Shown: positions 6,598 to 16,568 of the stretch, in pieces
Layout: the number at the start of each line of letters is the position of its first letter
How positions within the stretch are numbered: the stretch's first letter is position 1
From: Obrimoposthia wandeli
Lineage: Eukaryota
Direction of reading: 5' to 3'
NCBI GenBank assembly: GCA_977020255.1
Contig: CDROCS010000372.1
Location: 496,001 to 560,000, forward strand
Length of the DNA stretch: 64,000 bases
The notes under the pieces: generated by a model
What the model was told of the DNA's origin: nothing
Database searches by the model: none
What the model saw: only the letters and a program-made list of their open reading frames with translations
Position numbers and translations under genes: made by a program

Positions 6598-6951
6598 ATG
6601 AAAAAAACGCTGTTTTATTACTTTTTATTGTCTTTATTTACAGGAACATTAATTTATTATTTGCAATATTTCTCGGTTCCATTACCAAGAATTATTCGTT
6701 TTTATTTTAATGATTTTTTTATAATTCCTATTGTTCTTTATATCTGTTTACAAGTTTTAAAACGGACTAAAAACAATAAAGACTATTCATTAAGCTTACC
6801 CATAATTTTATACTTATGCTTTTTATATAGCTTATTATTCGAATTTATATTTCCAAAATATATAGCAAGATATACCAAAGACTTTGTTGATGTTATTGTT
6901 TATTTTGCAAGCGGATTTGTATTCTATTATCTTCAAAAAACTAAAAAATGA
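6598..6951 (+). CDS. Hypothetical membrane protein
   Basis: Several hydrophobic helices; ATG at 6598 preferred over the ORF-track start at 6574, which overlaps the upstream gene. Confidence 0.7.
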   Translation: MKKTLFYYFLLSLFTGTLIYYLQYFSVPLPRIIRFYFNDFFIIPIVLYICLQVLKRTKNNKDYSLSLPIILYLCFLYSLLFEFIFPKYIARYTKDFVDVIVYFASGFVFYYLQKTKK

Positions 6952-7865
6952 ATTCTATTAAAATTGCTAAAGAAAATATTGCACGTTTAAATACTGCAAT
7001 TACTTTTATTGAAGCAAATTTATCAGAAAAACTGTCTCTAGAAGTTATTGCGGAAAAAGCATACTTCTCTCCTTTTCATTTTCATAGATTGTTTAAAATT
7101 GTTGTTGGAGAAACGGTACATAATTTTATCAATAGAAAAAGAATTGAAAAATCTGCAGCATATTTATTACATCAAAATGAAATAAATACCACAGAAATTG
7201 CATTTAAAGTAGGTTTTAGTTCTTTATCAGCTTTCTCAAAATCTTTTAAAAAATTCTACGGAATGTCTCCTAGTAAATTCAAAAAAGAAAGTCCAGAAAA
7301 ATATAGCAAGATTAGCAAAACTGAAAGCAAGAATGGAAAAGTATCGGTTACATTTGAACAATATATTTGCAATATTAATAACGCTTTAAAATGGTTACAA
7401 ATGAATGCAAAAACAGAAATTAAAAAAGTTCCTAGATTAGATTTAGCTACTATTTCTCATAAAGGAAAAATGGACGCAATTGGCAGTATTTATAATAAAT
7501 TAGTAAAATGGGCAACTCCAAAAGGTTTGATTAATGATCAAACAAGAATGGTTACCATTTATCATGACAGTCCTAAAATTACAGATCCAAATAATTTAAG
7601 AATGAGCGCTTGTATTGTTCTAAATGATCCTATTGAACTTGATGGTGAAGTAAATTTAAGAATTTTAAGTCCTACAAAATGTATTGTTTCTAGATTAGAA
7701 ATTACTCCTTTTGAGTTTCAAAAAGCATGGGAATCTTCTTTTGCTTTTATGGTTGAAAACGGGTGCAAAAAATCTGAAATTGATCCTTTTGAAATTTATT
7801 ACAATAATGCAGAAGAACATCCAGAAAATAAATTTATTGTTGATTTATGTATTCCTATTTTGTAA
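6948..7865 (+). CDS. AraC family regulator with C-terminal GyrI-like small-molecule binding domain
   Basis: FSPFHFHRLFK..VGET and VGFSSLSAFSKSFKK AraC HTHs; YHDSPKIT...SAC and PFEIYYN GyrI-like motifs. Confidence 0.9.
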   Translation: MNSIKIAKENIARLNTAITFIEANLSEKLSLEVIAEKAYFSPFHFHRLFKIVVGETVHNFINRKRIEKSAAYLLHQNEINTTEIAFKVGFSSLSAFSKSFKKFYGMSPSKFKKESPEKYSKISKTESKNGKVSVTFEQYICNINNALKWLQMNAKTEIKKVPRLDLATISHKGKMDAIGSIYNKLVKWATPKGLINDQTRMVTIYHDSPKITDPNNLRMSACIVLNDPIELDGEVNLRILSPTKCIVSRLEITPFEFQKAWESSFAFMVENGCKKSEIDPFEIYYNNAEEHPENKFIVDLCIPIL

Positions 7866-7880
7866 AAACTTAACATTACT

Positions 7881-7938
7881 TGTCCGTTCGAGCGCAGTCG
7901 AGAACTCAATTAAGGTCTCGACTGCGCTCGACCAGACA
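7881..7938. repeat. REP-like hairpin (TCGAGCGCAGTCGAGA family)
   Basis: TGTC..TCGAGCGCAGTCGAGA-N12-TCTCGACTGCGCTCGA..GACA inverted repeat. Confidence 0.8.
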
Positions 7939-7984: not shown

Positions 7985-8055
7985 ACAATTGAGATATTAA
8001 AATCAACAACTCGGTATTTGTTTTTATTTTAAAATTGAATAACGCTACATCTTTG
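7985..8055 (+). promoter_or_regulatory. LytTR-type direct repeats plus weak -7 box (TonB receptor promoter)
   Basis: ACAATTGAG at 7985 and ACAACTCGG at 8006 (21-bp period); CATCTTTG with TTTG at 8052. Confidence 0.6.
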
Positions 8056-8077
8056 TATCATCAAAAAACAAACACAG

Positions 8078-10252
8078 ATGAAACGCATACTATTTATTCT
8101 ATTTACAATTTGTCAATTTTCATTAATTGCACAAACCACCATTTCTGGTAAAGTTACAGACTCAAAAAACAATCCTATATTTGGAGCAAATGTATATTTA
8201 GATGGAACTTACGATGGAAGTTCTACAAACGAAAAAGGAGAATTCTCTTTTAAAACTCAAGAAATTGGGTCACAAACTTTGGTGATTTCTTATGTTTCTT
8301 TTGAAACTTTCATAAAAACTGCCAATGTTTCATCTTTCAATAATTTAAAAATAAAATTAAGAGACGATGTAAACTCTTTAGATGCTGTAATTATAAACGC
8401 TGGTACTTTTAAGGCTGGTGAAAAAGCAAAAGTTACCGTTTTAAAACCTTTAGACATTGTAACAACAGCAAGTGCAGTTGGTGATGTTTTAGGTGCTTTG
8501 CAAACTTTACCAGGAACGTCTGCTGTTGCAGAAGATGGACGTCTTTTCGTAAGAGGTGGAAGTGCAGATGAAACAAAAATCTTTATTGATGGTGTTCGTG
8601 TTTTTACTCCTTATAGCCCAACTCCAAACAATGCTCCAACTCGTGGACGATATTCACCTTTTTTATTCAAAGGAATTTCATTTTCTACAGGTGGTTATTC
8701 TGCAGAATATGGACAAGCATTATCTGGTGTATTAGATTTAACAACCATTGATAAACCAGATCAAGAGAAAACAGAAATCTCTTTAATGACATTAGGAGTT
8801 GGTCTTGGAAACACACAAATTTGGAATAAAAATTCATTAAGCGTAAAAGCGTCATACATAAATCTAGGTCCTTACACAGAAGCTTTTACAGACAGAAATA
8901 CTTGGTTAAGTCCTTATCAAGCAAGTAGTGGCGAAATGGTTTACAGACACAGTTTTAAAGATGATTCTATGCTAAAAATCTATGGCGCTTTCAGTTATAC
9001 AGATTTAGAAGTGATACAAGATGATATAAATTTTGCTGATGGTTTTCGTTTCGGATTAAACAATAGAAACCTTTATCTAAATAGTTCTTACAAAAATAAA
9101 ATTGGTAATAATTGGCGAATTGAAAGTGGTTTGAGTTTTACCAATGACAATTCAGAAGTTAAAATAATTGATGATAAAATTGATAATAATGAAAACTCTG
9201 CACATTTTAAAATAAAATTGAAAAAGCAATTTACAAGCAGATTTAGAGTAAGTTTTGGTTCTGAATATTTTATCACAAAGTTTGATGAAACTTACAAACC
9301 AATCAATAATCAATCTTTCAATTACGGATTTAAAAATAACCTATTTGCATCCTTTGTAGAAACAGACATCTTTTTCTCTAAAAATTTAGCAACAAAAATA
9401 GGAATTAGAGCAGAACATTCAGATTTGTTAAATGAGTTTACAATTTCTCCAAGGTTATCTTTATCATATAAAACTAACAAAAACTCCCAGGTTTCATTGG
9501 CTTATGGTCAGTTTTATCAAAACCCAAGCAACAATTATTTAAAGTTCAATCAAGATTTTAAAGCTGAAAATGCATCACATTTAATTGCCAATTATCAACA
9601 TACCAAAAAAGATCAGATCTTCAGAATTGAAGCCTATTATAAAGATTATAGAGATTTGGTAAAGTTCGATACACAAATGGCAAATTTTAATTCTAACTAC
9701 TCAAATGATGGAAGTGCGTATGCAAAAGGAATCGATATTTTTTGGAGACAAAATGGTAAAATAAAAAACACAGATTATTGGGTTTCGTATTCGTATTTAG
9801 ACACCCAAAGAGATTTTAGAAATTACACAAAAACTGCAACTCCCAATTTTGCATCAACGCACAATTTATCTGTTGTTGGTAAACATTGGATTCAGAGCTT
9901 AAAAAGTCAAGTTGGTTTTGCATACAATTTTGCATCAGGCAGAACCTATACAAACCCAAATGAACCTGGCTTTATAAAAGGTGAGACAATACTAAATGAT
10001 AAAACAAAAAATTATAACTCTGTTAGTTTAAATTGGGCGTATTTAATCGATCAACAAAAAATATTATATTTTTCTGTAAACAATGTTTTAGGCACAAAAA
10101 ATGTGTTTGGCTACAATTACAAAAACACTCCAGAATCTAATAAAAAATTCGATAGACAAGCAAGAGTTCCCAACGCAGACAGTTTCTTTTTTGTAGGTTT
10201 CTTCTGGACAATTAGCGACGACAAAAAATCTAACAACTTAAATAATTTATAA
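8078..10252 (+). CDS. TonB-dependent receptor with carboxypeptidase-like regulatory N-domain
   Basis: Signal peptide; ISGKVTD..NPIFGANV N-domain, LQTLPG...LFVRGG..DET.IFIDG plug, beta-barrel-like body. Confidence 0.9.
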   Translation: MKRILFILFTICQFSLIAQTTISGKVTDSKNNPIFGANVYLDGTYDGSSTNEKGEFSFKTQEIGSQTLVISYVSFETFIKTANVSSFNNLKIKLRDDVNSLDAVIINAGTFKAGEKAKVTVLKPLDIVTTASAVGDVLGALQTLPGTSAVAEDGRLFVRGGSADETKIFIDGVRVFTPYSPTPNNAPTRGRYSPFLFKGISFSTGGYSAEYGQALSGVLDLTTIDKPDQEKTEISLMTLGVGLGNTQIWNKNSLSVKASYINLGPYTEAFTDRNTWLSPYQASSGEMVYRHSFKDDSMLKIYGAFSYTDLEVIQDDINFADGFRFGLNNRNLYLNSSYKNKIGNNWRIESGLSFTNDNSEVKIIDDKIDNNENSAHFKIKLKKQFTSRFRVSFGSEYFITKFDETYKPINNQSFNYGFKNNLFASFVETDIFFSKNLATKIGIRAEHSDLLNEFTISPRLSLSYKTNKNSQVSLAYGQFYQNPSNNYLKFNQDFKAENASHLIANYQHTKKDQIFRIEAYYKDYRDLVKFDTQMANFNSNYSNDGSAYAKGIDIFWRQNGKIKNTDYWVSYSYLDTQRDFRNYTKTATPNFASTHNLSVVGKHWIQSLKSQVGFAYNFASGRTYTNPNEPGFIKGETILNDKTKNYNSVSLNWAYLIDQQKILYFSVNNVLGTKNVFGYNYKNTPESNKKFDRQARVPNADSFFFVGFFWTISDDKKSNNLNNL

Positions 10253-10260
10253 TTTTTTTA

Positions 10261-10363
10261 GAAGCTATTTCCAGCTTTCCATTATATCTTTTTTCTGAAA
10301 AAGAAAAAAGGTTAAAAATATCAGCAGATATTTGAACGGTTTCAATCTGGGCTAAACTTGTTT
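10261..10363. repeat. MITE/REP-like element (GAAGCTATTTCCAGCTTTC...CAATCTGGGCTAAACTTGTTT), no inner insert
   Basis: Ends match the reverse complement of the element at 23922..24055. Confidence 0.75.
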
Positions 10364-10381
10364 AAAAGCTAGTTTAATAAT

Positions 10382-11101
10382 TTATAACAACGTTTTATTT
10401 TCTAAAGCATTTACAAATTTTCCTTTTGTTAACCATGCAATACTAAAAGCAACTAAAGCAATCACTTCTAAGTAAAAAAGCAAGTTCAAATCCCCTACTT
10501 TAGCTTCAATTTTAGCTTCAAATATTAAGAATAAGGCAATTGCAATTATAGCAAAAAGCATCATAAAACCACAAAAACGAATTAATGAGTTTTTAGTTTT
10601 CTCTTCTTCGTATTTTTCTGAACGTTTGTTATTTGTAAAAAGGAATAAACAAATATAAGTTAGCGTACCAAAAAAGAATAAAGCGCCAGTTGCATGAATC
10701 CATTGAGAAACATTAAAATTTCTGTTTCTTGTAACAATTTCTTTACAAGAATCTAAAGCGTCTAAATCTAAAGCTGTTGGAAAAAAAGCAACTAACAACA
10801 CAGAAAAGCCAGCAATTTTAAACGGAATTTTATCTTTTGGATATCCTTGATACGTAATAAAAAACAAACCTATTAAAACAATAAGTCCAACCAAAACATC
10901 TCTCATATACGTATGATAATAATGACTTATAGAATCTTGAACTTGAGAACAACCAAAAAATAAATTACCAACAATTAATAAAACAGGAATTGATAAACCT
11001 AAATATCCAATAATTTTCCGATGTTGGTTTTTTTCGATACTAAATTGTGAGAATTCTTTCATAATTTTAAATAATGAGGTTAAAATAAAAATAACATCCA
11101 T
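10382..11101 (-). CDS. DUF998-like membrane protein
   Basis: Multi-helix protein with SISHYYHT..RDVLVG, VAFFPT and WIHATGALFFF motifs. Confidence 0.65.
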   Translation of the reverse strand: MDVIFILTSLFKIMKEFSQFSIEKNQHRKIIGYLGLSIPVLLIVGNLFFGCSQVQDSISHYYHTYMRDVLVGLIVLIGLFFITYQGYPKDKIPFKIAGFSVLLVAFFPTALDLDALDSCKEIVTRNRNFNVSQWIHATGALFFFGTLTYICLFLFTNNKRSEKYEEEKTKNSLIRFCGFMMLFAIIAIALFLIFEAKIEAKVGDLNLLFYLEVIALVAFSIAWLTKGKFVNALENKTLL

Positions 11102-11150
11102 AAAACTAATGATTTATCTAATACAAAAACTAACTACAAATAAGTAAATT

Positions 11151-11221
11151 ACAATTCATCAATAAAAAAGTACAATTCAGTAATTCATTTTTCAATAATG
11201 CTTACAACTATCTGATATTTG
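11151..11221 (+). promoter_or_regulatory. LytTR-type direct repeats plus weak -7 box (hydrolase promoter)
   Basis: ACAATTCAT at 11151, ACAATTCAG at 11172; GATATTTG with TTTG at 11218. Confidence 0.6.
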
Positions 11222-11242
11222 CTTTAAATTAAAAAACATACA

Positions 11243-12046
11243 ATGAAAACCTTAAAAATTACCATAATATTTTTAGCAATTTTTCAATTGACAAATGCAC
11301 AATTCGAAGAAAAATTTTATTTTCCAAAAAAAGAATGGAAAGAAGTTAAAATTCCTTTTTCAGAAGAATTTATTCCTGTAGAAAAAGACACTCTACATAC
11401 TGCTTTTTTTCAACCTAAAACTTCTCCAAAAGCAACAATTCTATTTTTCCATGGAGCTGGTGGAAATATCTCTACTTATATGTATATGATAAAAACTATG
11501 GTAGAAAACGAATATCAAGTTTATGCGGTAGATTTTAGAGGTTATGGTAAATCTACAGGGAAACCAACACATTTAAATGTAGCAAAAGATGTCGAGCTAG
11601 TTTATGCTCAAATGAAAAAGAACAAAGCTATAAAAAATACAAAGTTAATTGTTTACGGAGCTTCATTGGGTTGTCAAATTGCAACAAATTTCACAAATCT
11701 ACATCAAAAAGAAGTAGATGGTTTGGTTTTAGATGGTGGCTTTGCTTCTTTTGCAGATGTAGCCAAATTATATGCTCCAAAAGAAGTACATATATATCTT
11801 GAGAATGCATTAGGAAAAATATATCCTTCAAAAGAAGAAATTAAAGAAATCAAAAATGTACCAAAACTAATTATTCATGGAAAAAAAGATGCATCAATTC
11901 CAATAAAGCATTCTGAAATAGTATTCAAAAACGCACAAGAACCAAAAGAATTCTTTGTTTCTGAAAAAGATCATTTAGAAGCATTAACATTAGAAACTGA
12001 TTCAGTTTTTAAACAAATTGACAAGCTTTTAACAGTTCAGCAATAA
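11243..12046 (+). CDS. Secreted alpha/beta hydrolase
   Basis: Signal peptide; FFHGAGGN, DFRGYG, GASLG nucleophile elbow, IHGKKD, terminal His region. Confidence 0.9.
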   Translation: MKTLKITIIFLAIFQLTNAQFEEKFYFPKKEWKEVKIPFSEEFIPVEKDTLHTAFFQPKTSPKATILFFHGAGGNISTYMYMIKTMVENEYQVYAVDFRGYGKSTGKPTHLNVAKDVELVYAQMKKNKAIKNTKLIVYGASLGCQIATNFTNLHQKEVDGLVLDGGFASFADVAKLYAPKEVHIYLENALGKIYPSKEEIKEIKNVPKLIIHGKKDASIPIKHSEIVFKNAQEPKEFFVSEKDHLEALTLETDSVFKQIDKLLTVQQ

Positions 12047-12102
12047 AAAGTTACAATTCGGTATGTTTCTTGTTTAAAGTTGAGAGAAACATCAGATATT
12101 TA
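12032..12102 (+). promoter_or_regulatory. LytTR-type direct repeats plus weak -7 box (DUF2141 promoter)
   Basis: ACAGTTCAG at 12032, ACAATTCGG at 12053; GATATTTA with TTTA at 12099. Confidence 0.6.
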
Positions 12103-12131
12103 CATCATCAATAAAACATAAAACAACAATC

Positions 12132-12551
12132 ATGAAAAAAATACTTTTAATATTCGCTTTCGTTTTTAGTGGAATTCTAACTACAAACGCACAAGAAGAA
12201 ACATTTAATTTAACTGTAAACATTGCCGGTTTAAATTCTAATAAAGGAACGTTATTGGTTGGGCTTTACAACAAAAAAGAAAGCTTCTTAAACAAACAAT
12301 TTAAAGGTGATGTTGTTAAAATTATAGATAAAAAATCTGTAGTTATTTTTAAAAATTTGCCAAAAGGAGAATATGCAGTTTCTTTTGTACATGATGAAAA
12401 TAACAACAATAAAATGGATACTAATTTCTTCGGAATACCAAAAGAAGATTATGGTTGTTCTAACAATGCAAGAGGTTTTATGGGACCTCCAAAATACGAT
12501 GATGCAAAATTTCAATTAGAATCAAACAAAACAATAGATATTAAAATATAA
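12132..12551 (+). CDS. DUF2141 domain protein
   Basis: GEYAVSFVHDENNN.KMDTNFFGIPKEDYGCSNN..GFMGPP signature; signal peptide. Confidence 0.9.
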   Translation: MKKILLIFAFVFSGILTTNAQEETFNLTVNIAGLNSNKGTLLVGLYNKKESFLNKQFKGDVVKIIDKKSVVIFKNLPKGEYAVSFVHDENNNNKMDTNFFGIPKEDYGCSNNARGFMGPPKYDDAKFQLESNKTIDIKI

Positions 12552-12552
12552 T

Positions 12553-13182
12553 ATGAAAGCTAAAAAAACACTTTATTATTTATTAGCTATTTCAGCTGTC
12601 GCGATTGGTTTATACCCGGCAATTTACTTTACTATAGATAGAAAATTCGGTTTACTAGCAAGCAAATCAGAAATACTTTTAGCAGACACACTTTGGAACA
12701 CAATGTTCTATACACATATTATTTTAGGTGGAATTACTTTATTAATAGGTTGGATTCAATTCAATAAAAAGTTTAGAAATAAGAATTTAGAGTTGCACAA
12801 AAAAATAGGAAAAATATATGTTTTGTGTTGCTTGTTAAGTGGAATTGCAGGTTTCTATATAGCATTACATGCAACAGGAGGAATTAGTCCTAAATTAGGT
12901 TTTGCATGTATGGCAATCTTCTGGTTTTTCTCTACACTTTTTGCTTTCACAGCTATTAAAAACGGAAAAATTATCAAGCATCAAAAATTAATGATTTACA
13001 GTTATGCTGCCTGTTTTTCTGCAGTAACCTTAAGAATTTGGTTGCCAATTTTATCAGCAACTTTAGGCGGTTTTTTACCAGCTTATAGAATTGTAGCTTG
13101 GTTATCTTGGGTTCCAAACATTATAGTAGCCTATTTTATTATTAAATATCAATTTAAAAATCAACAACTTAAAACGAACTAA
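12553..13182 (+). CDS. DUF2306 membrane protein
   Basis: FYTHIILG, HKKIGKIYV, HQKLMIYSYA and AVTLRIWLP motifs. Confidence 0.85.
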   Translation: MKAKKTLYYLLAISAVAIGLYPAIYFTIDRKFGLLASKSEILLADTLWNTMFYTHIILGGITLLIGWIQFNKKFRNKNLELHKKIGKIYVLCCLLSGIAGFYIALHATGGISPKLGFACMAIFWFFSTLFAFTAIKNGKIIKHQKLMIYSYAACFSAVTLRIWLPILSATLGGFLPAYRIVAWLSWVPNIIVAYFIIKYQFKNQQLKTN

Positions 13183-13183
13183 A

Positions 13184-13807
13184 ATGAAAAAATCAATCTT
13201 AATTATCGCACTTTTATTTGCAGGAATTATAACTGCACAATCTAAATACCAAACAGGAATGCAAAAAGCTTTTGGACTTTGGGAAAATGGAAAAATGACT
13301 GAAGCGTCTCAAATGTTTGAGAGAATTTCTAAAGCAGAACCTACAAAATGGAAACCTGCATATTATGCCGCAACAGTAGAAATACTAGGAAGTTTCGGAA
13401 TGAAAGATGAAGCAAAACTGACAGAAAAATTAAACAAAGCACAAGAGTTTTTAAATACTGCAACCTCAAATTCAGTAAATAATCCAGAAATATTAATCAC
13501 ACAGGCATTATTAAACCTTGGTTATATTGCTTTTGACGGACAAAAATACGGAATGACATTGTCAGGAAAAAACAACCAATTATATGCGAAAGCACTGGCA
13601 ATTACACCAAATAACCCAAGAGTAATTTTAGGGTTTGCAGAATGGAATATGGGTGCTGCTAAATTCTTTGGGAAATCTACAAAACCTTATTGTGATGAAA
13701 TTAAGCGCGCTATTAAATTAGGAAAAGAAGAAAAAATTGAAGAGGAATTTTATCCAAAATTTATGGAATCTAGAGCTTTAGAAGTTTTAAAACAATGTGA
13801 GAAATAG
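13184..13807 (+). CDS. Secreted helical (TPR-like) hypothetical protein
   Basis: Signal peptide; PNNPR motif and helical repeats; type of protein usually found next to this class of TonB receptor. Confidence 0.7.
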   Translation: MKKSILIIALLFAGIITAQSKYQTGMQKAFGLWENGKMTEASQMFERISKAEPTKWKPAYYAATVEILGSFGMKDEAKLTEKLNKAQEFLNTATSNSVNNPEILITQALLNLGYIAFDGQKYGMTLSGKNNQLYAKALAITPNNPRVILGFAEWNMGAAKFFGKSTKPYCDEIKRAIKLGKEEKIEEEFYPKFMESRALEVLKQCEK

Positions 13808-13906: not shown

Positions 13907-14995
13907 CTATACTTTCAAAATCTTACTAATCAAATCTTCTTTCGTTTTTTCATCATCACCAAACAACCATTGTAGGGTATTATCTTCCCAAATTTGATCA
14001 TATTGTGTTTGATTAATAATATTTCGGTCTTTAGCCAAGTCTAAAATTTTACCAGGATAAGAAGATTGCTCATCACTTTCCATTTCGCCTAAAGGATATG
14101 GATCATCTAAACCCATTAAAACTTGATTGGAACCTTGTCTATCAATCATTAAATTTAATGAATCTGTATCATGTACAAGTGTATCAAAAAAGATATTTGG
14201 GTGCCCAACGGCTTTTCTAGGATGCGTTTTTCCTTCAAATAAATCTGGTCTTCCATCAAAACCTTGAATTCTTCTTCCTAAATTCATTTGCGCCAATTGA
14301 CCTCCGTGCGCAAAACAAGTTCTAATATTTTTAAAACGTTCTTGCATTCCGTTTAAGGTATAAAAATGATACGCATCGCCACATTGTGCTAGCATCCAAA
14401 TTAAATGAAAACGCCAGTTGGTGTTTTCTAATTTTATCATTTTATCTCCATCATAAGGATGAATTTCAATCGCTAATTTATATTTATCTGCTAGTTCAAA
14501 AATTCGATCATTTTCTTCATCAAAAACACAACGCCATTGCCCAATTGAATCCATAAAATGAGTTGGCAAACACAAAACTTTCAACCCTAATTCTTCTACA
14601 CAACGCTTCATTTCGTCTAGTGCGCCATAAATAAAACCTGGATGTACAACAAAACCACAGGTAAATTTACTAGGATGTTCTCTTTGTACTTTAGCGTTAA
14701 AATCATTCTGAAAACGCAACGCTTTTTTCATTTCTTCTAAACGCAAACCGTTTCCATATAATTGAGAAAGATTTAAAACAACAGCATGATCTATTTTGTT
14801 TTTTTCCATCCAAATTAACTTCTCATCAAGAAAAAAACTAGAATCAGTTACAGGTCGTTTCCATCCTTTTTGCAACATGTGTTTACGCTCATTATCTACC
14901 CAAAAGATTTCCTTTTCCCTCATAAAATCAGGAATTTCTTCTGGATAGGGTAATAAATGTGAATGTCCGTTTATGCGTAGTTTTCTTTTTGTCAT
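13907..14995 (-). CDS. Amidohydrolase, likely 2-amino-3-carboxymuconate-6-semialdehyde decarboxylase (ACMSD)
   Basis: N-terminal HSH, IHP, FAHGG and MGLDDPYPLGE motifs of ACMSD-like amidohydrolase_2; kynurenine cluster context. Confidence 0.8.
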   Translation of the reverse strand: MTKRKLRINGHSHLLPYPEEIPDFMREKEIFWVDNERKHMLQKGWKRPVTDSSFFLDEKLIWMEKNKIDHAVVLNLSQLYGNGLRLEEMKKALRFQNDFNAKVQREHPSKFTCGFVVHPGFIYGALDEMKRCVEELGLKVLCLPTHFMDSIGQWRCVFDEENDRIFELADKYKLAIEIHPYDGDKMIKLENTNWRFHLIWMLAQCGDAYHFYTLNGMQERFKNIRTCFAHGGQLAQMNLGRRIQGFDGRPDLFEGKTHPRKAVGHPNIFFDTLVHDTDSLNLMIDRQGSNQVLMGLDDPYPLGEMESDEQSSYPGKILDLAKDRNIINQTQYDQIWEDNTLQWLFGDDEKTKEDLISKILKV

Positions 14996-15000
14996 CTTTC

Positions 15001-15077
15001 TGTCATTCCTGCGTAGGCAGGAATCTATTTTTAATTTAACGATATAATTATGGATTCCTGTCTTTGCAGGAATGACA
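15001..15077. repeat. Dimeric GTCATTCCTGC...GCAGGAATC REP/MITE, copy 1
   Basis: TGTCATTCCTGCGTAGGCAGGAATC-spacer-GGATTCCTGTCTTTGCAGGAATGACA. Confidence 0.9.
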
Positions 15078-15110
15078 ATTTAGTTGTTTTTTGCTGTTTA
15101 CTGCAACTAA

Positions 15111-15644
15111 TTAACTGCTAACTTTATTCGGAGCTTCCATTACAGTACCACAATTGTCACAAGTACATTTCTTTTTATCTGAATAATATGTATCAAAAAT
15201 CACTGGCATATCAGTTTCAATATTATCTAACTTAAATTTCTTTCTGTACAATTGATTTCCACAATTTTCACAATACCATTCTAGAGCATCTTTCATCTTC
15301 TTTTTACGAGGATACTCAATTACCAAACCAACTGTATTCGCTTTTCTTTGCGGAGAATGTGGCACTTTTGCTGGCAATAAATAAATATCGCCTTCATTAA
15401 TTTCTACATCAATCATTTTGCCTTTATCATCTATAATTTTCAAAATCATGTCTCCTTCTACTTGGTAGAAAAATTCTGGAGTTTCATTATAATGATAATC
15501 TTTTCTATTATTTGGCCCACCAACAACCATCACAATATATTCACCATTATCCCAAACTTGCTTGTTCCCAACTGGTGGTTTTAATAAATGACGATTTTCA
15601 TCAATCCACTTTTTAAAATTTAAAGGTTGTACTAAATTGCTCAT
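15111..15644 (-). CDS. nbaC: 3-hydroxyanthranilate 3,4-dioxygenase
   Basis: LLKPPVGNK, GGPN.RKDYH, EFFYQ, PHSPQR motifs and the C-terminal rubredoxin-like CENC/CDNC pair. Confidence 0.95.
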   Translation of the reverse strand: MSNLVQPLNFKKWIDENRHLLKPPVGNKQVWDNGEYIVMVVGGPNNRKDYHYNETPEFFYQVEGDMILKIIDDKGKMIDVEINEGDIYLLPAKVPHSPQRKANTVGLVIEYPRKKKMKDALEWYCENCGNQLYRKKFKLDNIETDMPVIFDTYYSDKKKCTCDNCGTVMEAPNKVSS

Positions 15645-15659
15645 ATAGTTATTTTTTTG

Positions 15660-15777
15660 GCGTTCCCTAAAGGTCGGGCTTTTTGCTATATCTTTTTATT
15701 TGTTCTCGATACATTTTTCAAAAAAAAGAAAAATACTCGAACTGACATAAAAAGGATGTCGCTTCAATCCCTAACGC
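15660..15777. repeat. GCGTT...AACGC MITE-like element carrying an inner TCGAG element (15702..15747)
   Basis: Reverse complement of the elements at 32983 and 40866. Confidence 0.8.
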
Positions 15778-15791
15778 AAGATTCGTTAAAT

Positions 15792-16568
15792 TTATAAAGA
15801 TTTTGTTCTTCCACCATCAACAGGAACATTAATTCCGTTAATATAACTTGCTTGTTTACTTGTTAAAAATACAATTGCTGCAGCAACTTCTTCTGGTTTT
15901 GCAAAACGTTTTGCAGGCGAAGCACTTTTCATAGCTTCTGCAACTTCATCAAAAGACTTTCCTGTTTTGTCCGCTTTATTATTTATAATTTCATTTAAAC
16001 GCCCTGTTCCTGTTGCACCTGGTAAGACATTATTTACTGTAATTCCGAATTGACCGAGTTCATTTGCCAACGTTTTAGACCAACTTGCAACTGCGCCACG
16101 AATTGTATTCGAAACACCCAAACCATCTAAAGGTTGTTTTACAGAAGTAGAAATTACATTTACAATTCTACCAAAATCTTGCGTTTTCATAAACGGAACC
16201 AAGGCTTGTACCAAAACATGATTACATTTTAAATGTTGTGTAAAAGCACTTTCAAATTCTTCTATTTTAGCATTAAGTATTGGACCTCCTGCTGGACCTC
16301 CAGTATTATTTATCAAGATATGAAACTGCAAATCTGAAGCTTCCAAAACCGATTTCAATTCAGTTGGTTTTGAAAAATCTGCAATCAAATAATTATGCTT
16401 TTGATTTTTGTTTGGTAATTCTGCTAAAACAGTTTTCAATTTTGCTTCATTTCTAGCAATTAAAGTTACGTTTGCTCCTTCTTCTGCTAATAAAATTGCA
16501 GTTGCTTTTCCTATTCCTTGTGTGCTTCCACAAACTAATGCGTTTTTATTTTTTAAGTGTAATTCCAT
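15792..16568 (-). CDS. SDR family oxidoreductase, atypical (no YxxxK)
   Basis: CGSTQGIG Rossmann motif, NNTGG; SNTIR at the position of YxxxK. Confidence 0.85.
   Translation of the reverse strand: MELHLKNKNALVCGSTQGIGKATAILLAEEGANVTLIARNEAKLKTVLAELPNKNQKHNYLIADFSKPTELKSVLEASDLQFHILINNTGGPAGGPILNAKIEEFESAFTQHLKCNHVLVQALVPFMKTQDFGRIVNVISTSVKQPLDGLGVSNTIRGAVASWSKTLANELGQFGITVNNVLPGATGTGRLNEIINNKADKTGKSFDEVAEAMKSASPAKRFAKPEEVAAAIVFLTSKQASYINGINVPVDGGRTKSL

What the first reader, a model, noticed from the sequence alone, without database searches (positions are those of the whole stretch)
7985..12102. Three promoters with identical geometry define an orphan LytTR-type regulon
Seen: pairs of 9-mer direct repeats at a 21-bp period upstream of three genes: ACAATTGAG/ACAACTCGG (7985/8006), ACAATTCAT/ACAATTCAG (11151/11172) and ACAGTTCAG/ACAATTCGG (12032/12053). 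In each case the TTT(G/A) of a degenerate -7 box starts exactly 46 bp after the second repeat (8052, 11218, 12099). Established: LytTR regulators such as AgrA bind 9-mer direct repeats with 12-bp spacers (e.g. ACAGTTAAG-N12-ACAGTTAAG). Inference: the TonB receptor, the hydrolase and the DUF2141-DUF2306-helical protein genes form an activator-dependent regulon whose regulator is encoded outside this window.
Basis: partly seen in the sequence, partly recalled or inferred. Interest (0 to 1): 0.7.

Follow-up and report, generated by a model that had tools for sequence, protein, structure and literature searches.

The report
LytTR regulon for HusA-like uptake genes
Three promoters in this Polaribacter-like contig carry a conserved pair of 9-bp repeats that marks a widespread, undescribed flavobacterial two-component (LytTR) regulon, which controls a TonB receptor and a relative of the P. 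gingivalis haem/porphyrin-binding protein HusA.

Summary
They are the only such sites in the window and on contig C372.

The same architecture recurs at orthologous promoters:
- 146 PWM hits in 80 public Flavobacteriaceae loci, against 1 in the reversed control.
- TTT(G/A) exactly at +46 in 142 of 146.
- Downstream genes: 65 TonB receptor, 65 DUF2141, 12 helical protein.

The motif also precedes the operon of one LytTR response-regulator ortholog group. That operon reads first gene (DUF2141 paralog or helical protein), PF06580 kinase with 2TM domain, small 2TM proteins, then the 251-aa regulator.

In 121 sampled family genomes:
- The strict pattern had no control hits.
- It occurred in 81 of 95 genomes with the regulator and 3 of 26 without.
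- In 51 genomes it lay within about 7 kb upstream of the regulator gene.

The regulator is not in the window. The nearest relative on C372 is only 39% identical. Close orthologs sit on other contigs of the assembly (C2018 or C1827).

The 'helical protein' is a distant homolog of the haemophore HusA (profile E 3.4e-14, TM 0.77). This suggests a porphyrin-like uptake function, which is unproven. The hydrolase site is lineage-specific.

No binding or transcription data exist, and I found no prior description. The mechanism is a known kind; the regulon is new.

The parts
7985..8014 (+). Repeat pair 1 (9 bp + 12-bp A-rich spacer + 9 bp), upstream of the TonB-dependent receptor gene
   Evidence: PWM score 29.5 bits. 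An orthologous site is upstream of the receptor in 65 public loci.
8048..8055 (+). -7 box CATCTTTG. The predicted transcription start is near 8060 (the A of the conserved cATCAA).
   Evidence: Sequence. The box sits at a fixed +46 offset in 142/146 sites. Its position relative to the TSS is inferred from the -12..-5 placement of TAnnTTTG in F. psychrophilum (PMC9723704). Not mapped experimentally.
8078..10252 (+). TonB-dependent receptor (CarboxypepD_reg + Plug + barrel), a regulon member and the positional analogue of HusB
   Evidence: Pfam. It is 46% identical to the receptor next to the motif-HEL-HK-RR operon on C6317 and 70-77% identical to the C2724 and C361 receptors.
11151..11180 (+). 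Repeat pair 2, upstream of the alpha/beta hydrolase gene. This site is lineage-specific.
   Evidence: PWM score 38.8 bits. There is no site upstream of the orthologous hydrolase in L093, L097, L105 or L132, and a weak one (19.5 bits) in L115.
11214..11221 (+). -7 box GATATTTG. The predicted transcription start is near 11226.
   Evidence: inferred.
11243..12046 (+). Exported alpha/beta hydrolase (Hydrolase_4/Abhydrolase_1) with a signal peptide. It is a regulon member in this lineage only.
   Evidence: Pfam, N-terminus.
12032..12061 (+). Repeat pair 3, upstream of the DUF2141 operon. Repeat 1 overlaps the 3' end of the hydrolase gene.
   Evidence: PWM score 40.5 bits. An orthologous site is upstream of DUF2141 in 65 public loci.
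12095..12102 (+). -7 box GATATTTA. The predicted transcription start is near 12107.
   Evidence: inferred.
12132..12551 (+). DUF2141 protein with a signal peptide. It is the first gene of the target operon, and a paralog heads the regulator operon in Polaribacter and Tenacibaculum.
   Evidence: Pfam E 1.4e-36. It is 39% identical to the first gene of the C5952 HK-RR operon.
12553..13182 (+). DUF2306 inner-membrane protein (four hydrophobic segments)
   Evidence: Pfam E 4e-48, hydropathy.
13184..13807 (+).
   Evidence: Family profile vs PDB 6bqs HusA: E 3.4e-14 over positions 20-206. AF2 model pLDDT 91.5. Foldseek TM 0.77/0.79. It is 36-48% identical to the first gene of the HK-RR operons on C6317 and C6821.

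Best explanation
The three repeat pairs are binding sites for a dimer of one specific LytTR-type response regulator. This is a 251-aa REC+LytTR protein whose ortholog group is present in about four fifths of the sampled Flavobacteriaceae.

Its partner is a membrane histidine kinase of the PF06580 type. The kinase has three N-terminal transmembrane segments and a C-terminal 2TM domain, and it is encoded together with several small 2TM proteins.

The proposed mechanism, which is inferred, runs as follows. The phosphorylated regulator binds two 9-bp direct repeats, ACA(A/G)TTC(A/G)G, one 21-bp period apart, at about -75 to -46. From there it recruits or repositions sigma-A RNA polymerase at promoters that have a near-consensus -7 box but only a T-run in place of the -33 element. 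The invariant 46-bp distance fixes the helical face and distance to the -7 box.

The regulon has five parts:
- the regulator's own operon (positive autoregulation);
- a TonB-dependent receptor;
- the DUF2141-DUF2306-HusA-like operon;
- lineage-specific recruits, which here means the exported hydrolase;
- in other Polaribacter genomes, a DUF2807 protein.

In this Polaribacter-like genome the regulator operon lies elsewhere, probably on contig C2018 or C1827 of the same assembly.

The helical protein is a distant HusA homolog paired with a TonB receptor. The most likely physiological role is therefore inducible capture and uptake of a porphyrin-like or other hydrophobic ligand. This step is the least certain (about 0.35-0.4).
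For: Site reality and geometry:
- establish the three sites.
- All 12 sites on 8 contigs of the assembly share the +46 box.
- There are 146 hits at 16 bits or more in 1.45 Mb of public loci, against 1 in the control.
- 142 of the 146 have TTTG or TTTA exactly at +46, and the downstream genes fall into 65 receptor, 65 DUF2141, 12 HEL, 2 kinase and 1 hydrolase.
- Information content peaks only at the repeats, the A-tract, the GTA after repeat 2, a T-run, the -7 box and cATCAA.

Link to the regulator:
- The motif heads operons ending in PF06580 kinase + LytTR RR on C5952, C6821 and C6317, and in L127, L136 and L144-L147.
- In four genomes with the unlinked layout, a 74-79% identical RR sits far away, with the motif about 4 kb upstream on the same strand at the head of its operon.
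- Those genomes have only 3-4 exact motif matches each.
- In the family sample the strict pattern has no control hits. It occurs in 81/95 RR-positive and 3/26 RR-negative genomes, and lies within about 7 kb upstream of the RR on the same strand in 51 (my tally).
- The HusA-like gene occurs in 67/95 RR-positive and 0/26 RR-negative genomes, and is adjacent to the RR in about 58/67.

Homology between window genes and the genes of linked operons.

HusA homology.
Against: - There is no binding, expression or TSS data. No RNA run holds this sequence.
Its assignment to C2018 or C1827 rests on identity patterns only.
- 14 of 95 regulator-positive genomes lack an exact pattern match and 3 of 26 negative ones have one. 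Strict matching and incomplete genomes may explain both.
- The genomes are phylogenetically related, so the co-occurrence counts are not independent events.
- HusA groove residues are only partly conserved: F80 is kept, while W130 and Y164 align to glycines.
- In P. gingivalis the hus regulator is reported as MarR-type, not LytTR.
- Activation versus repression is inferred from position only.
Confidence: 0.82

Rival explanations
1. A different LytTR paralog binds the sites in this genome, for example the kinase/regulator pair at C372:1501836-1503322, rather than the ortholog group identified here.
For: C372 carries at least ten LytTR genes. Its best relative of the cognate group is 39% identical and has an adjacent PF06580 kinase. 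The true ortholog was not seen on C372.
Against: Complete Polaribacter genomes carry both the 74-79% ortholog, with the motif at its operon, and 44-45% paralogs. Three close orthologs are present on other contigs of the assembly with the motif upstream: C1827, C2018 and C5952. No motif match was found near the C372 paralogs.
Confidence: 0.08
2. The regulator acts as a repressor or dual regulator at these sites rather than as a simple activator.
For: Nothing in the sequence alone fixes the sign of regulation. Some LytTR proteins can repress; AgrA at bsaA is mentioned in PMC4227749.
Against: The sites lie wholly upstream of the core promoter, at about -75 to -46. The -33 element is degenerate while the -7 box is good. 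The regulator's own operon carries the site. This is the usual layout of LytTR-activated, autoinduced promoters.
Confidence: 0.07
3. The neighbouring Rob-like AraC/GyrI regulator (6948-7865) binds the 21-bp-period repeats.
For: The gene lies directly upstream of the first site. From general knowledge, AraC-family proteins can bind direct repeats at a 21-bp period.
Against: All 53 full-length public loci have the motif, but only 14 have an AraC/GyrI homolog within 10 kb. The motif also occurs at the distant regulator operon and at DUF2807 genes with no such neighbour. The repeat sequence is of the LytTR type.
Confidence: 0.03
4. The repeats are chance similarities, or remnants of a repeated or mobile element, and have no regulatory role.
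For: The genome is AT-rich and the motif is short.
Against: There were no hits in reversed controls across 121 genomes. Each genome has only 3-4 copies. Conservation is confined to promoter-like elements at orthologous positions across genera.
Confidence: 0.01

Closest known systems
AgrA-type LytTR promoters (S. aureus agr P2/P3; also ComE and PlnC-type pheromone regulons)
   Same: - Two 9-bp direct repeats with a 12-bp spacer, bound by a dimeric REC+LytTR regulator just upstream of a suboptimal core promoter.
- The regulator's own operon is a target.
- The repeat sequence is close to the AgrA half-site.

   Different: - The host phylum is Bacteroidota, with a -33/-7 sigma-A promoter.
- The proximal repeat centre is predicted near -50, compared with about -60.
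- The kinase is PF06580 with 2TM domains, not an AgrC-type HPK10.
- There is no pheromone peptide or processing gene.
- The targets are envelope uptake proteins.
LytS/LytTR-type two-component systems (LytSR, BtsSR, YpdAB)
   Same: - A PF06580 kinase is paired with a REC+LytTR regulator. NCBIfam places the regulator nearest LytR/BtsR, below cut-off.
- The system controls a transporter for the presumed ligand.
   Different: - No 5TM-Lyt sensor domain was detected.
- The kinase instead has three N-terminal TM segments, a C-terminal 2TM domain and four to five separate 2TM proteins.
- The target is a TonB-dependent receptor, not an inner-membrane symporter.
Hus haem/porphyrin uptake system of Porphyromonas gingivalis (HusA haemophore + HusB TonB receptor)
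   Same: A HusA-family protein (profile E 3.4e-14, TM 0.77/0.79) is encoded beside, and co-regulated with, a TonB-dependent receptor and a membrane protein.
   Different: - Identity is only about 23%.
- Several porphyrin-groove residues differ.
- The reported P. gingivalis regulator HusC is MarR-type.
- DUF2141 and DUF2306 partners are not reported for hus.
- Homology of the receptor to HusB was not tested.

Membership tests
LytTR-regulator binding site (AgrA/ComE class) | Two 9-bp direct repeats separated by 12 bp (21-bp period) | tested here: met
   All three window sites and 146 sites in public loci.
LytTR-regulator binding site (AgrA/ComE class) | Half-site resembling the LytTR consensus (recalled from memory as [TA][AC][CA]GTTN[AG][TG]; AgrA ACAGTTAAG) | tested here: met
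The consensus here is ACA(A/G)TTC(A/G)G. It fits at 8-9 of 9 positions.
LytTR-regulator binding site (AgrA/ComE class) | A cognate REC+LytTR regulator genomically linked to the motif (autoregulated operon) | tested here: met
   In 51 of 95 genomes the strict motif lies within about 7 kb upstream of the regulator gene on the same strand.
LytTR-regulator binding site (AgrA/ComE class) | Sites immediately upstream of an activator-dependent core promoter | tested here: inconclusive
   A fixed 46-bp offset to a -7 box and a degenerate -33 region. No TSS data exist.
LytTR-regulator binding site (AgrA/ComE class) | Direct binding of the regulator to the repeats | not testable with these tools
   Needs EMSA, DAP-seq or ChIP.
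LytS/LytTR two-component system | PF06580 histidine kinase paired with a REC+LytTR regulator | tested here: met
   Pfam on the C5952, C6821 and C6317 operons. The same order is seen in Polaribacter and Tenacibaculum genomes.
LytS/LytTR two-component system | 5TM-Lyt (LytS-YhcK) membrane sensor domain | tested here: not met
   Only PF06580 and the 2TM domain (PF13239) were detected. Three N-terminal hydrophobic segments.
Hus haem/porphyrin uptake system | HusA-family haemophore-like protein | tested here: met
   Profile vs 6bqs E 3.4e-14 over nearly the full length. Foldseek TM 0.77/0.79, rmsd 3.0.
Hus haem/porphyrin uptake system | Adjacent cognate TonB-dependent receptor (HusB) | tested here: inconclusive
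   A receptor is adjacent and co-regulated. Homology to HusB itself could not be tested because no HusB sequence was on hand.
Hus haem/porphyrin uptake system | Conserved hydrophobic porphyrin groove (F80, M116, L122, L123, P126, W130, L157, Q160, Y164) | tested here: inconclusive
   F80 is conserved. M116 and L122 are replaced by L and I. W130 and Y164 align to invariant glycines with neighbouring Y122 and W154.
Hus haem/porphyrin uptake system | Porphyrin or haem binding and uptake | not testable with these tools
   Needs spectroscopy and growth assays.
Bacteroidota sigma-A promoter | -7 box TAnnTTTG at -12..-5 and a -33 TTTG-type element | tested here: inconclusive
   The -7 box is present as xAnnTTT(G/A). 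Only a T-run is found at the expected -33 position.

The most novel reading that the evidence does not exclude
The regulon may be a Bacteroidota counterpart of an autoinducing circuit. The TonB receptor and the HusA-like binding protein would be both outputs and the input route of the signal. A porphyrin-like or other hydrophobic molecule captured outside the cell would be delivered to the 2TM-type kinase complex, which then amplifies its own uptake machinery and its own regulator.

This would make it a family-wide, ligand-gated positive-feedback sensor. It would also give the first functional role to the 2TM domain proteins and to DUF2141 and DUF2306.
Probability: 0.18. Interest if true: 0.75.

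Novelty: new member of a known kind. Interest (0 to 1): 0.6.

Why it matters
LytTR regulators are among the most numerous transcription factors in Flavobacteriaceae, and this one contig has at least ten. Yet in the literature I could search, none has a defined binding site or regulon.

This finding provides several things:
- A precise operator and a strict promoter grammar (repeat, N12, repeat, then a fixed 46 bp to the -7 box).
- A named regulator ortholog group present in about 78% of the sampled family genomes.
- A compact regulon of 3-5 promoters that can be tested directly in cultured strains such as Polaribacter sp. Hel1_85, P. porphyrae or Tenacibaculum insulae.

It also links that circuit to a free-living relative of the P. 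gingivalis haemophore HusA. That gives a concrete hypothesis for four protein families of unknown function (DUF2141, DUF2306, 2TM, HusA-like) and for how abundant marine flavobacteria sense and import a porphyrin-like resource.

Tried and rejected
I rebuilt it from coordinates.
The window genome's own regulator operon therefore could not be read.
- Only two contig-type runs of unrecorded kind, from one study, hold the stretch, and none is on record as RNA. I did not use read laying because contigs cannot show transcription starts.
- A sequence search of solved structures with the regulator found only receiver domains and one distant LytTR domain. No residue-level comparison with AgrA-DNA contacts was possible.
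- NCBIfam gives no specific names for the regulon proteins.
- DUF2141 and the receptor have no informative solved relatives.
- Three literature leads proved irrelevant: the F. johnsoniae coevolution LytTR mutation, the PSP/Toastrack paper and the R. anatipestifer TCS, which is OmpR/PhoR-type.
- Full-text searches for LytTR with flavobacterial terms, DUF2141, 2TM or HusA found no description of this regulon.
- The AraC/GyrI neighbour was rejected as regulator on co-occurrence grounds.

Full report
**Observation**

The window sequence shows the three repeat pairs exactly where reported: 7985/8006, 11151/11172 and 12032/12053. Each pair is two 9-mers of the form ACA(A/G)(T/C)T(C/G)(A/G)(G/T) separated by 12 bp. 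TTTG, TTTG and TTTA start 46 bp after the first base of the second repeat (8052, 11218, 12099).

All three sites are on the + strand and precede + strand genes:
- a TonB-dependent receptor (8078-10252);
- an alpha/beta hydrolase (11243-12046);
- an operon of DUF2141 (12132-12551), DUF2306 (12553-13182) and a 207-aa helical protein (13184-13807).

A neutral consensus pair with up to three mismatches finds only these three sites in 64 kb, against 0.65 expected. A PWM finds only these three above 12 bits and none in the reversed sequence.

**Setting**

The window is G000:C372:496001-560000 in a 1.35 Gb assembly of 6,912 contigs. The assembly clearly holds several bacterial genomes besides its main organism. 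I worked only on the bacterial contigs.

The window's proteins are closest to Polaribacter. The helical protein is up to 88% identical to Polaribacter MAG proteins.

**The motif elsewhere in the assembly**

Exact matches to the motif pair are few in the whole assembly: 33, of which about 17 have the same A-rich spacer. When the +46 TTT(G/A) is included there are 19 exact matches, all on Bacteroidota-type contigs. The three window sites are the only ones on C372.

The matches fall into two kinds of locus.
- On C361 and C2724 the motif precedes orthologs of the window's receptor and of its DUF2141/helical-protein operon.
- On C5952, C6821 and C6317 it heads operons of a different form. These start with a DUF2141 or helical-protein gene, continue with a PF06580 histidine kinase (mostly with a C-terminal 2TM domain) and small 2TM proteins, and end with a REC+LytTR response regulator.

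The window genes are homologous to the first genes of those operons. The helical protein is 36-48% identical and DUF2141 is 39% identical. The window receptor is 46% identical to the receptor lying just upstream of the C6317 operon.

All 12 sites on these eight contigs have TTT(G/A) at exactly +46.

**Public genomes**

A scan of one genome per species with an alignment of the helical protein returned 80 loci from Polaribacter, Tenacibaculum, Maribacter, Muricauda/Flagellimonas, Pontimicrobium and others.
- The PWM gives 146 hits at 16 bits or more in 1.45 Mb, against 1 in the reversed control.
- The gene immediately downstream is the receptor in 65 cases, DUF2141 in 65, the helical protein in 12, a kinase in 2 and the hydrolase in 1, with one hit unassigned.
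- TTTG or TTTA sits at exactly +46 in 142 of the 146.

Per-column information content is high only at a few elements:
- the two repeats;
- an A-tract in the spacer;
- GTA directly after repeat 2;
- a T-run about 9-13 bp after repeat 2;
- the xAnnTTTG box;
- a cATCAA element 4-9 bp after the box.

The ATG follows the box by mostly 21-30 nt.

The gene order is motif-receptor-motif-DUF2141-(DUF2306)-helical protein. In L127, L136 and L144-L147 the helical-protein gene runs on into the kinase, 2TM and regulator genes.

**Finding the regulator of the 'orphan' layout**

I examined three Polaribacter genomes and one Tenacibaculum genome that have the unlinked layout. Each has a 74-79% identical ortholog of the linked regulator hundreds of kilobases from the receptor locus.

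Each of these genomes has only three or four exact motif matches:
- one about 4 kb upstream of that regulator on the same strand, at the head of an operon that reads DUF2141 paralog, kinase, four to five 2TM proteins, regulator;
- two at the receptor/DUF2141 locus.

One further A-tract site per Polaribacter genome (exact in one, one mismatch in the other two) precedes an orthologous 241-aa DUF2807 protein.

**Family-wide co-occurrence**

I sampled 121 genomes of the family.
- The regulator has a clear ortholog class (52% identity or more, 266 bits or more) in 95 genomes. Paralogs score 45% or less.
- The strict pattern has no hit in the backwards control in any genome and is found in 84 genomes.
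- By my tally, it occurs in 81 of 95 regulator-positive genomes and 3 of 26 regulator-negative genomes.
- In 51 genomes a match lies within about 7 kb upstream of the regulator gene on the same strand and contig.
- The helical-protein gene is found in 67 genomes, all of them regulator-positive (0 of 26 negatives). In about 58 of these it lies directly upstream of the regulator.

The linked arrangement is therefore the norm. The unlinked one, seen in this window, is a derived state of Polaribacter, Tenacibaculum and a few others.

These counts are not phylogenetically independent. Even so, the positional association is far beyond what roughly one site per 3.5 Mb could produce by chance.

**The regulator of this genome**

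No LytTR gene lies in the window. The best relative of the cognate group on C372 is 39% identical, at 1,502,579.

Close orthologs with the motif upstream are on three other contigs:
- C5952, which is 94% identical to T. insulae and therefore Tenacibaculum-like;
- C1827;
- C2018.

C361's locus is nearer to Polaribacter sp. Hel1_85 than the window's is. The C1827 regulator is 94.4% identical to the Hel1_85 regulator, against 90.8% for C2018. C2018 is therefore the tentative partner of C372. This is a weak inference, and I could not read those contigs.

**Promoter geometry**

In F. psychrophilum the sigma-A box TAnnTTTG occupies -12 to -5 (PMC9723704). Applying that here gives these positions:
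- repeat 2 at about -54 to -46;
- repeat 1 at about -75 to -67;
- the T-run at about -37 to -33, where a -33 element belongs;
- the start at the A of cATCAA, near 8060, 11226 and 12107 in the window.

[quoted passage not shown] This supports an activator model, but no transcript data exist.

**What the regulon may do**

The receptor, hydrolase, DUF2141 and helical protein all have signal peptides, and DUF2306 is an integral membrane protein. The regulon is therefore an envelope module.

The helical protein models with high confidence, pLDDT 91.5. Its best structural match, well ahead of generic TPR proteins, is the P. gingivalis haemophore HusA, with TM 0.77/0.79. The family profile matches HusA at E 3.4e-14 over almost the full length.

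HusA binds haem and, with higher affinity, metal-free porphyrins in a hydrophobic groove. It hands them to the adjacent TonB receptor HusB (PMC6173696, PMC11681262).

I mapped the published groove residues with a chain offset of 21, which fits all nine positions.
- F80 is conserved.
- M116 and L122 stay hydrophobic.
- W130 and Y164 align to invariant glycines, each next to a conserved aromatic residue.

The ligand may therefore differ. The P. gingivalis regulator HusC is described as MarR-type, so the LytTR control layer is not shared.

A fungal DUF2306 protein is required for an epoxidation step (PMC12895699). This hints at a membrane-bound modifying role, but no more than that.

**Rivals**

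- The Rob-like AraC/GyrI gene next to the first site fails co-occurrence. A homolog lies within 10 kb in 14 of 53 full-length loci, while all 53 have the motif.
- A paralogous LytTR regulator cannot be excluded for this genome, but nothing favours it.
- Chance or a mobile-element origin is excluded by the controls and by the low copy number.

**The hydrolase site**

This site is strong (38.8 bits). It is absent upstream of the orthologous hydrolase in four relatives and weak in a fifth. In the four without a site the hydrolase follows the receptor on the same strand.

In the window an oppositely oriented membrane-protein gene (10382-11101) separates the two. A separate promoter may therefore have been needed. 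This is an inference.

**Novelty**

Full-text searches found no description of this motif, regulon or regulator group. The scan's earlier notes hold nothing on it.

The mechanism is the known LytTR direct-repeat mechanism. Four things are new:
- the regulon itself;
- its strict grammar on a Bacteroidota promoter;
- the 2TM-type kinase module;
- the link to a HusA-like uptake system.

Noticed in passing
window 7881-7938: A GC-rich perfect-centre palindrome (29-nt arms, 86% complementary, no loop) lies between the AraC/GyrI gene stop and the first repeat pair. It occurs once in the window. It is probably a terminator or REP-like hairpin and is not part of the motif.
   Followed up: partly
window 6948-7865: A Rob-like regulator (AraC HTH + GyrI-like domain) is conserved next to the receptor in a subset of Polaribacter loci (14 of 53 full-length loci). 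Its target is unknown. It may add a second control layer on the receptor.
   Followed up: partly
window 10382-11101 (-): A 239-aa six-TM membrane protein (weak DUF998 match) is inserted on the opposite strand between the receptor and the hydrolase. It is absent from most relatives and may explain why the hydrolase acquired its own motif-bearing promoter.
   Followed up: no
window 13907-16568 (-): A kynurenine/3-hydroxyanthranilate cluster (amidohydrolase, 3-HAO, SDR) lies directly downstream. Public Polaribacter loci show similarly sized reverse-strand genes downstream of the helical-protein gene, which suggests conserved synteny; I did not check their homology. No motif is associated with the cluster.
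   Followed up: no
G000 contigs C665:67959 and C4489:25470; L162-L164: A fourth conserved target in Polaribacter is the motif upstream of a 241-aa DUF2807 (adhesin-head-like) lipoprotein-like gene. Two near-identical sites on other contigs of the assembly resemble these by motif sequence, but I could not read them.
   Followed up: partly
L066 (C1048) 4787 and L067 (C5849) 4953: In other flavobacterial contigs of the assembly the same motif and geometry precede a beta-lactamase-family serine hydrolase gene and an ABC transporter operon. Regulon content therefore varies between lineages.
   Followed up: partly
G000 as a whole: The assembly (1.35 Gb, 6,912 contigs) contains megabase-scale contigs of several Flavobacteriaceae (Polaribacter-like C372 and C361, Tenacibaculum-like C2724 and C5952, and others). 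The window comes from an associated bacterium, not from the main organism.
   Followed up: no
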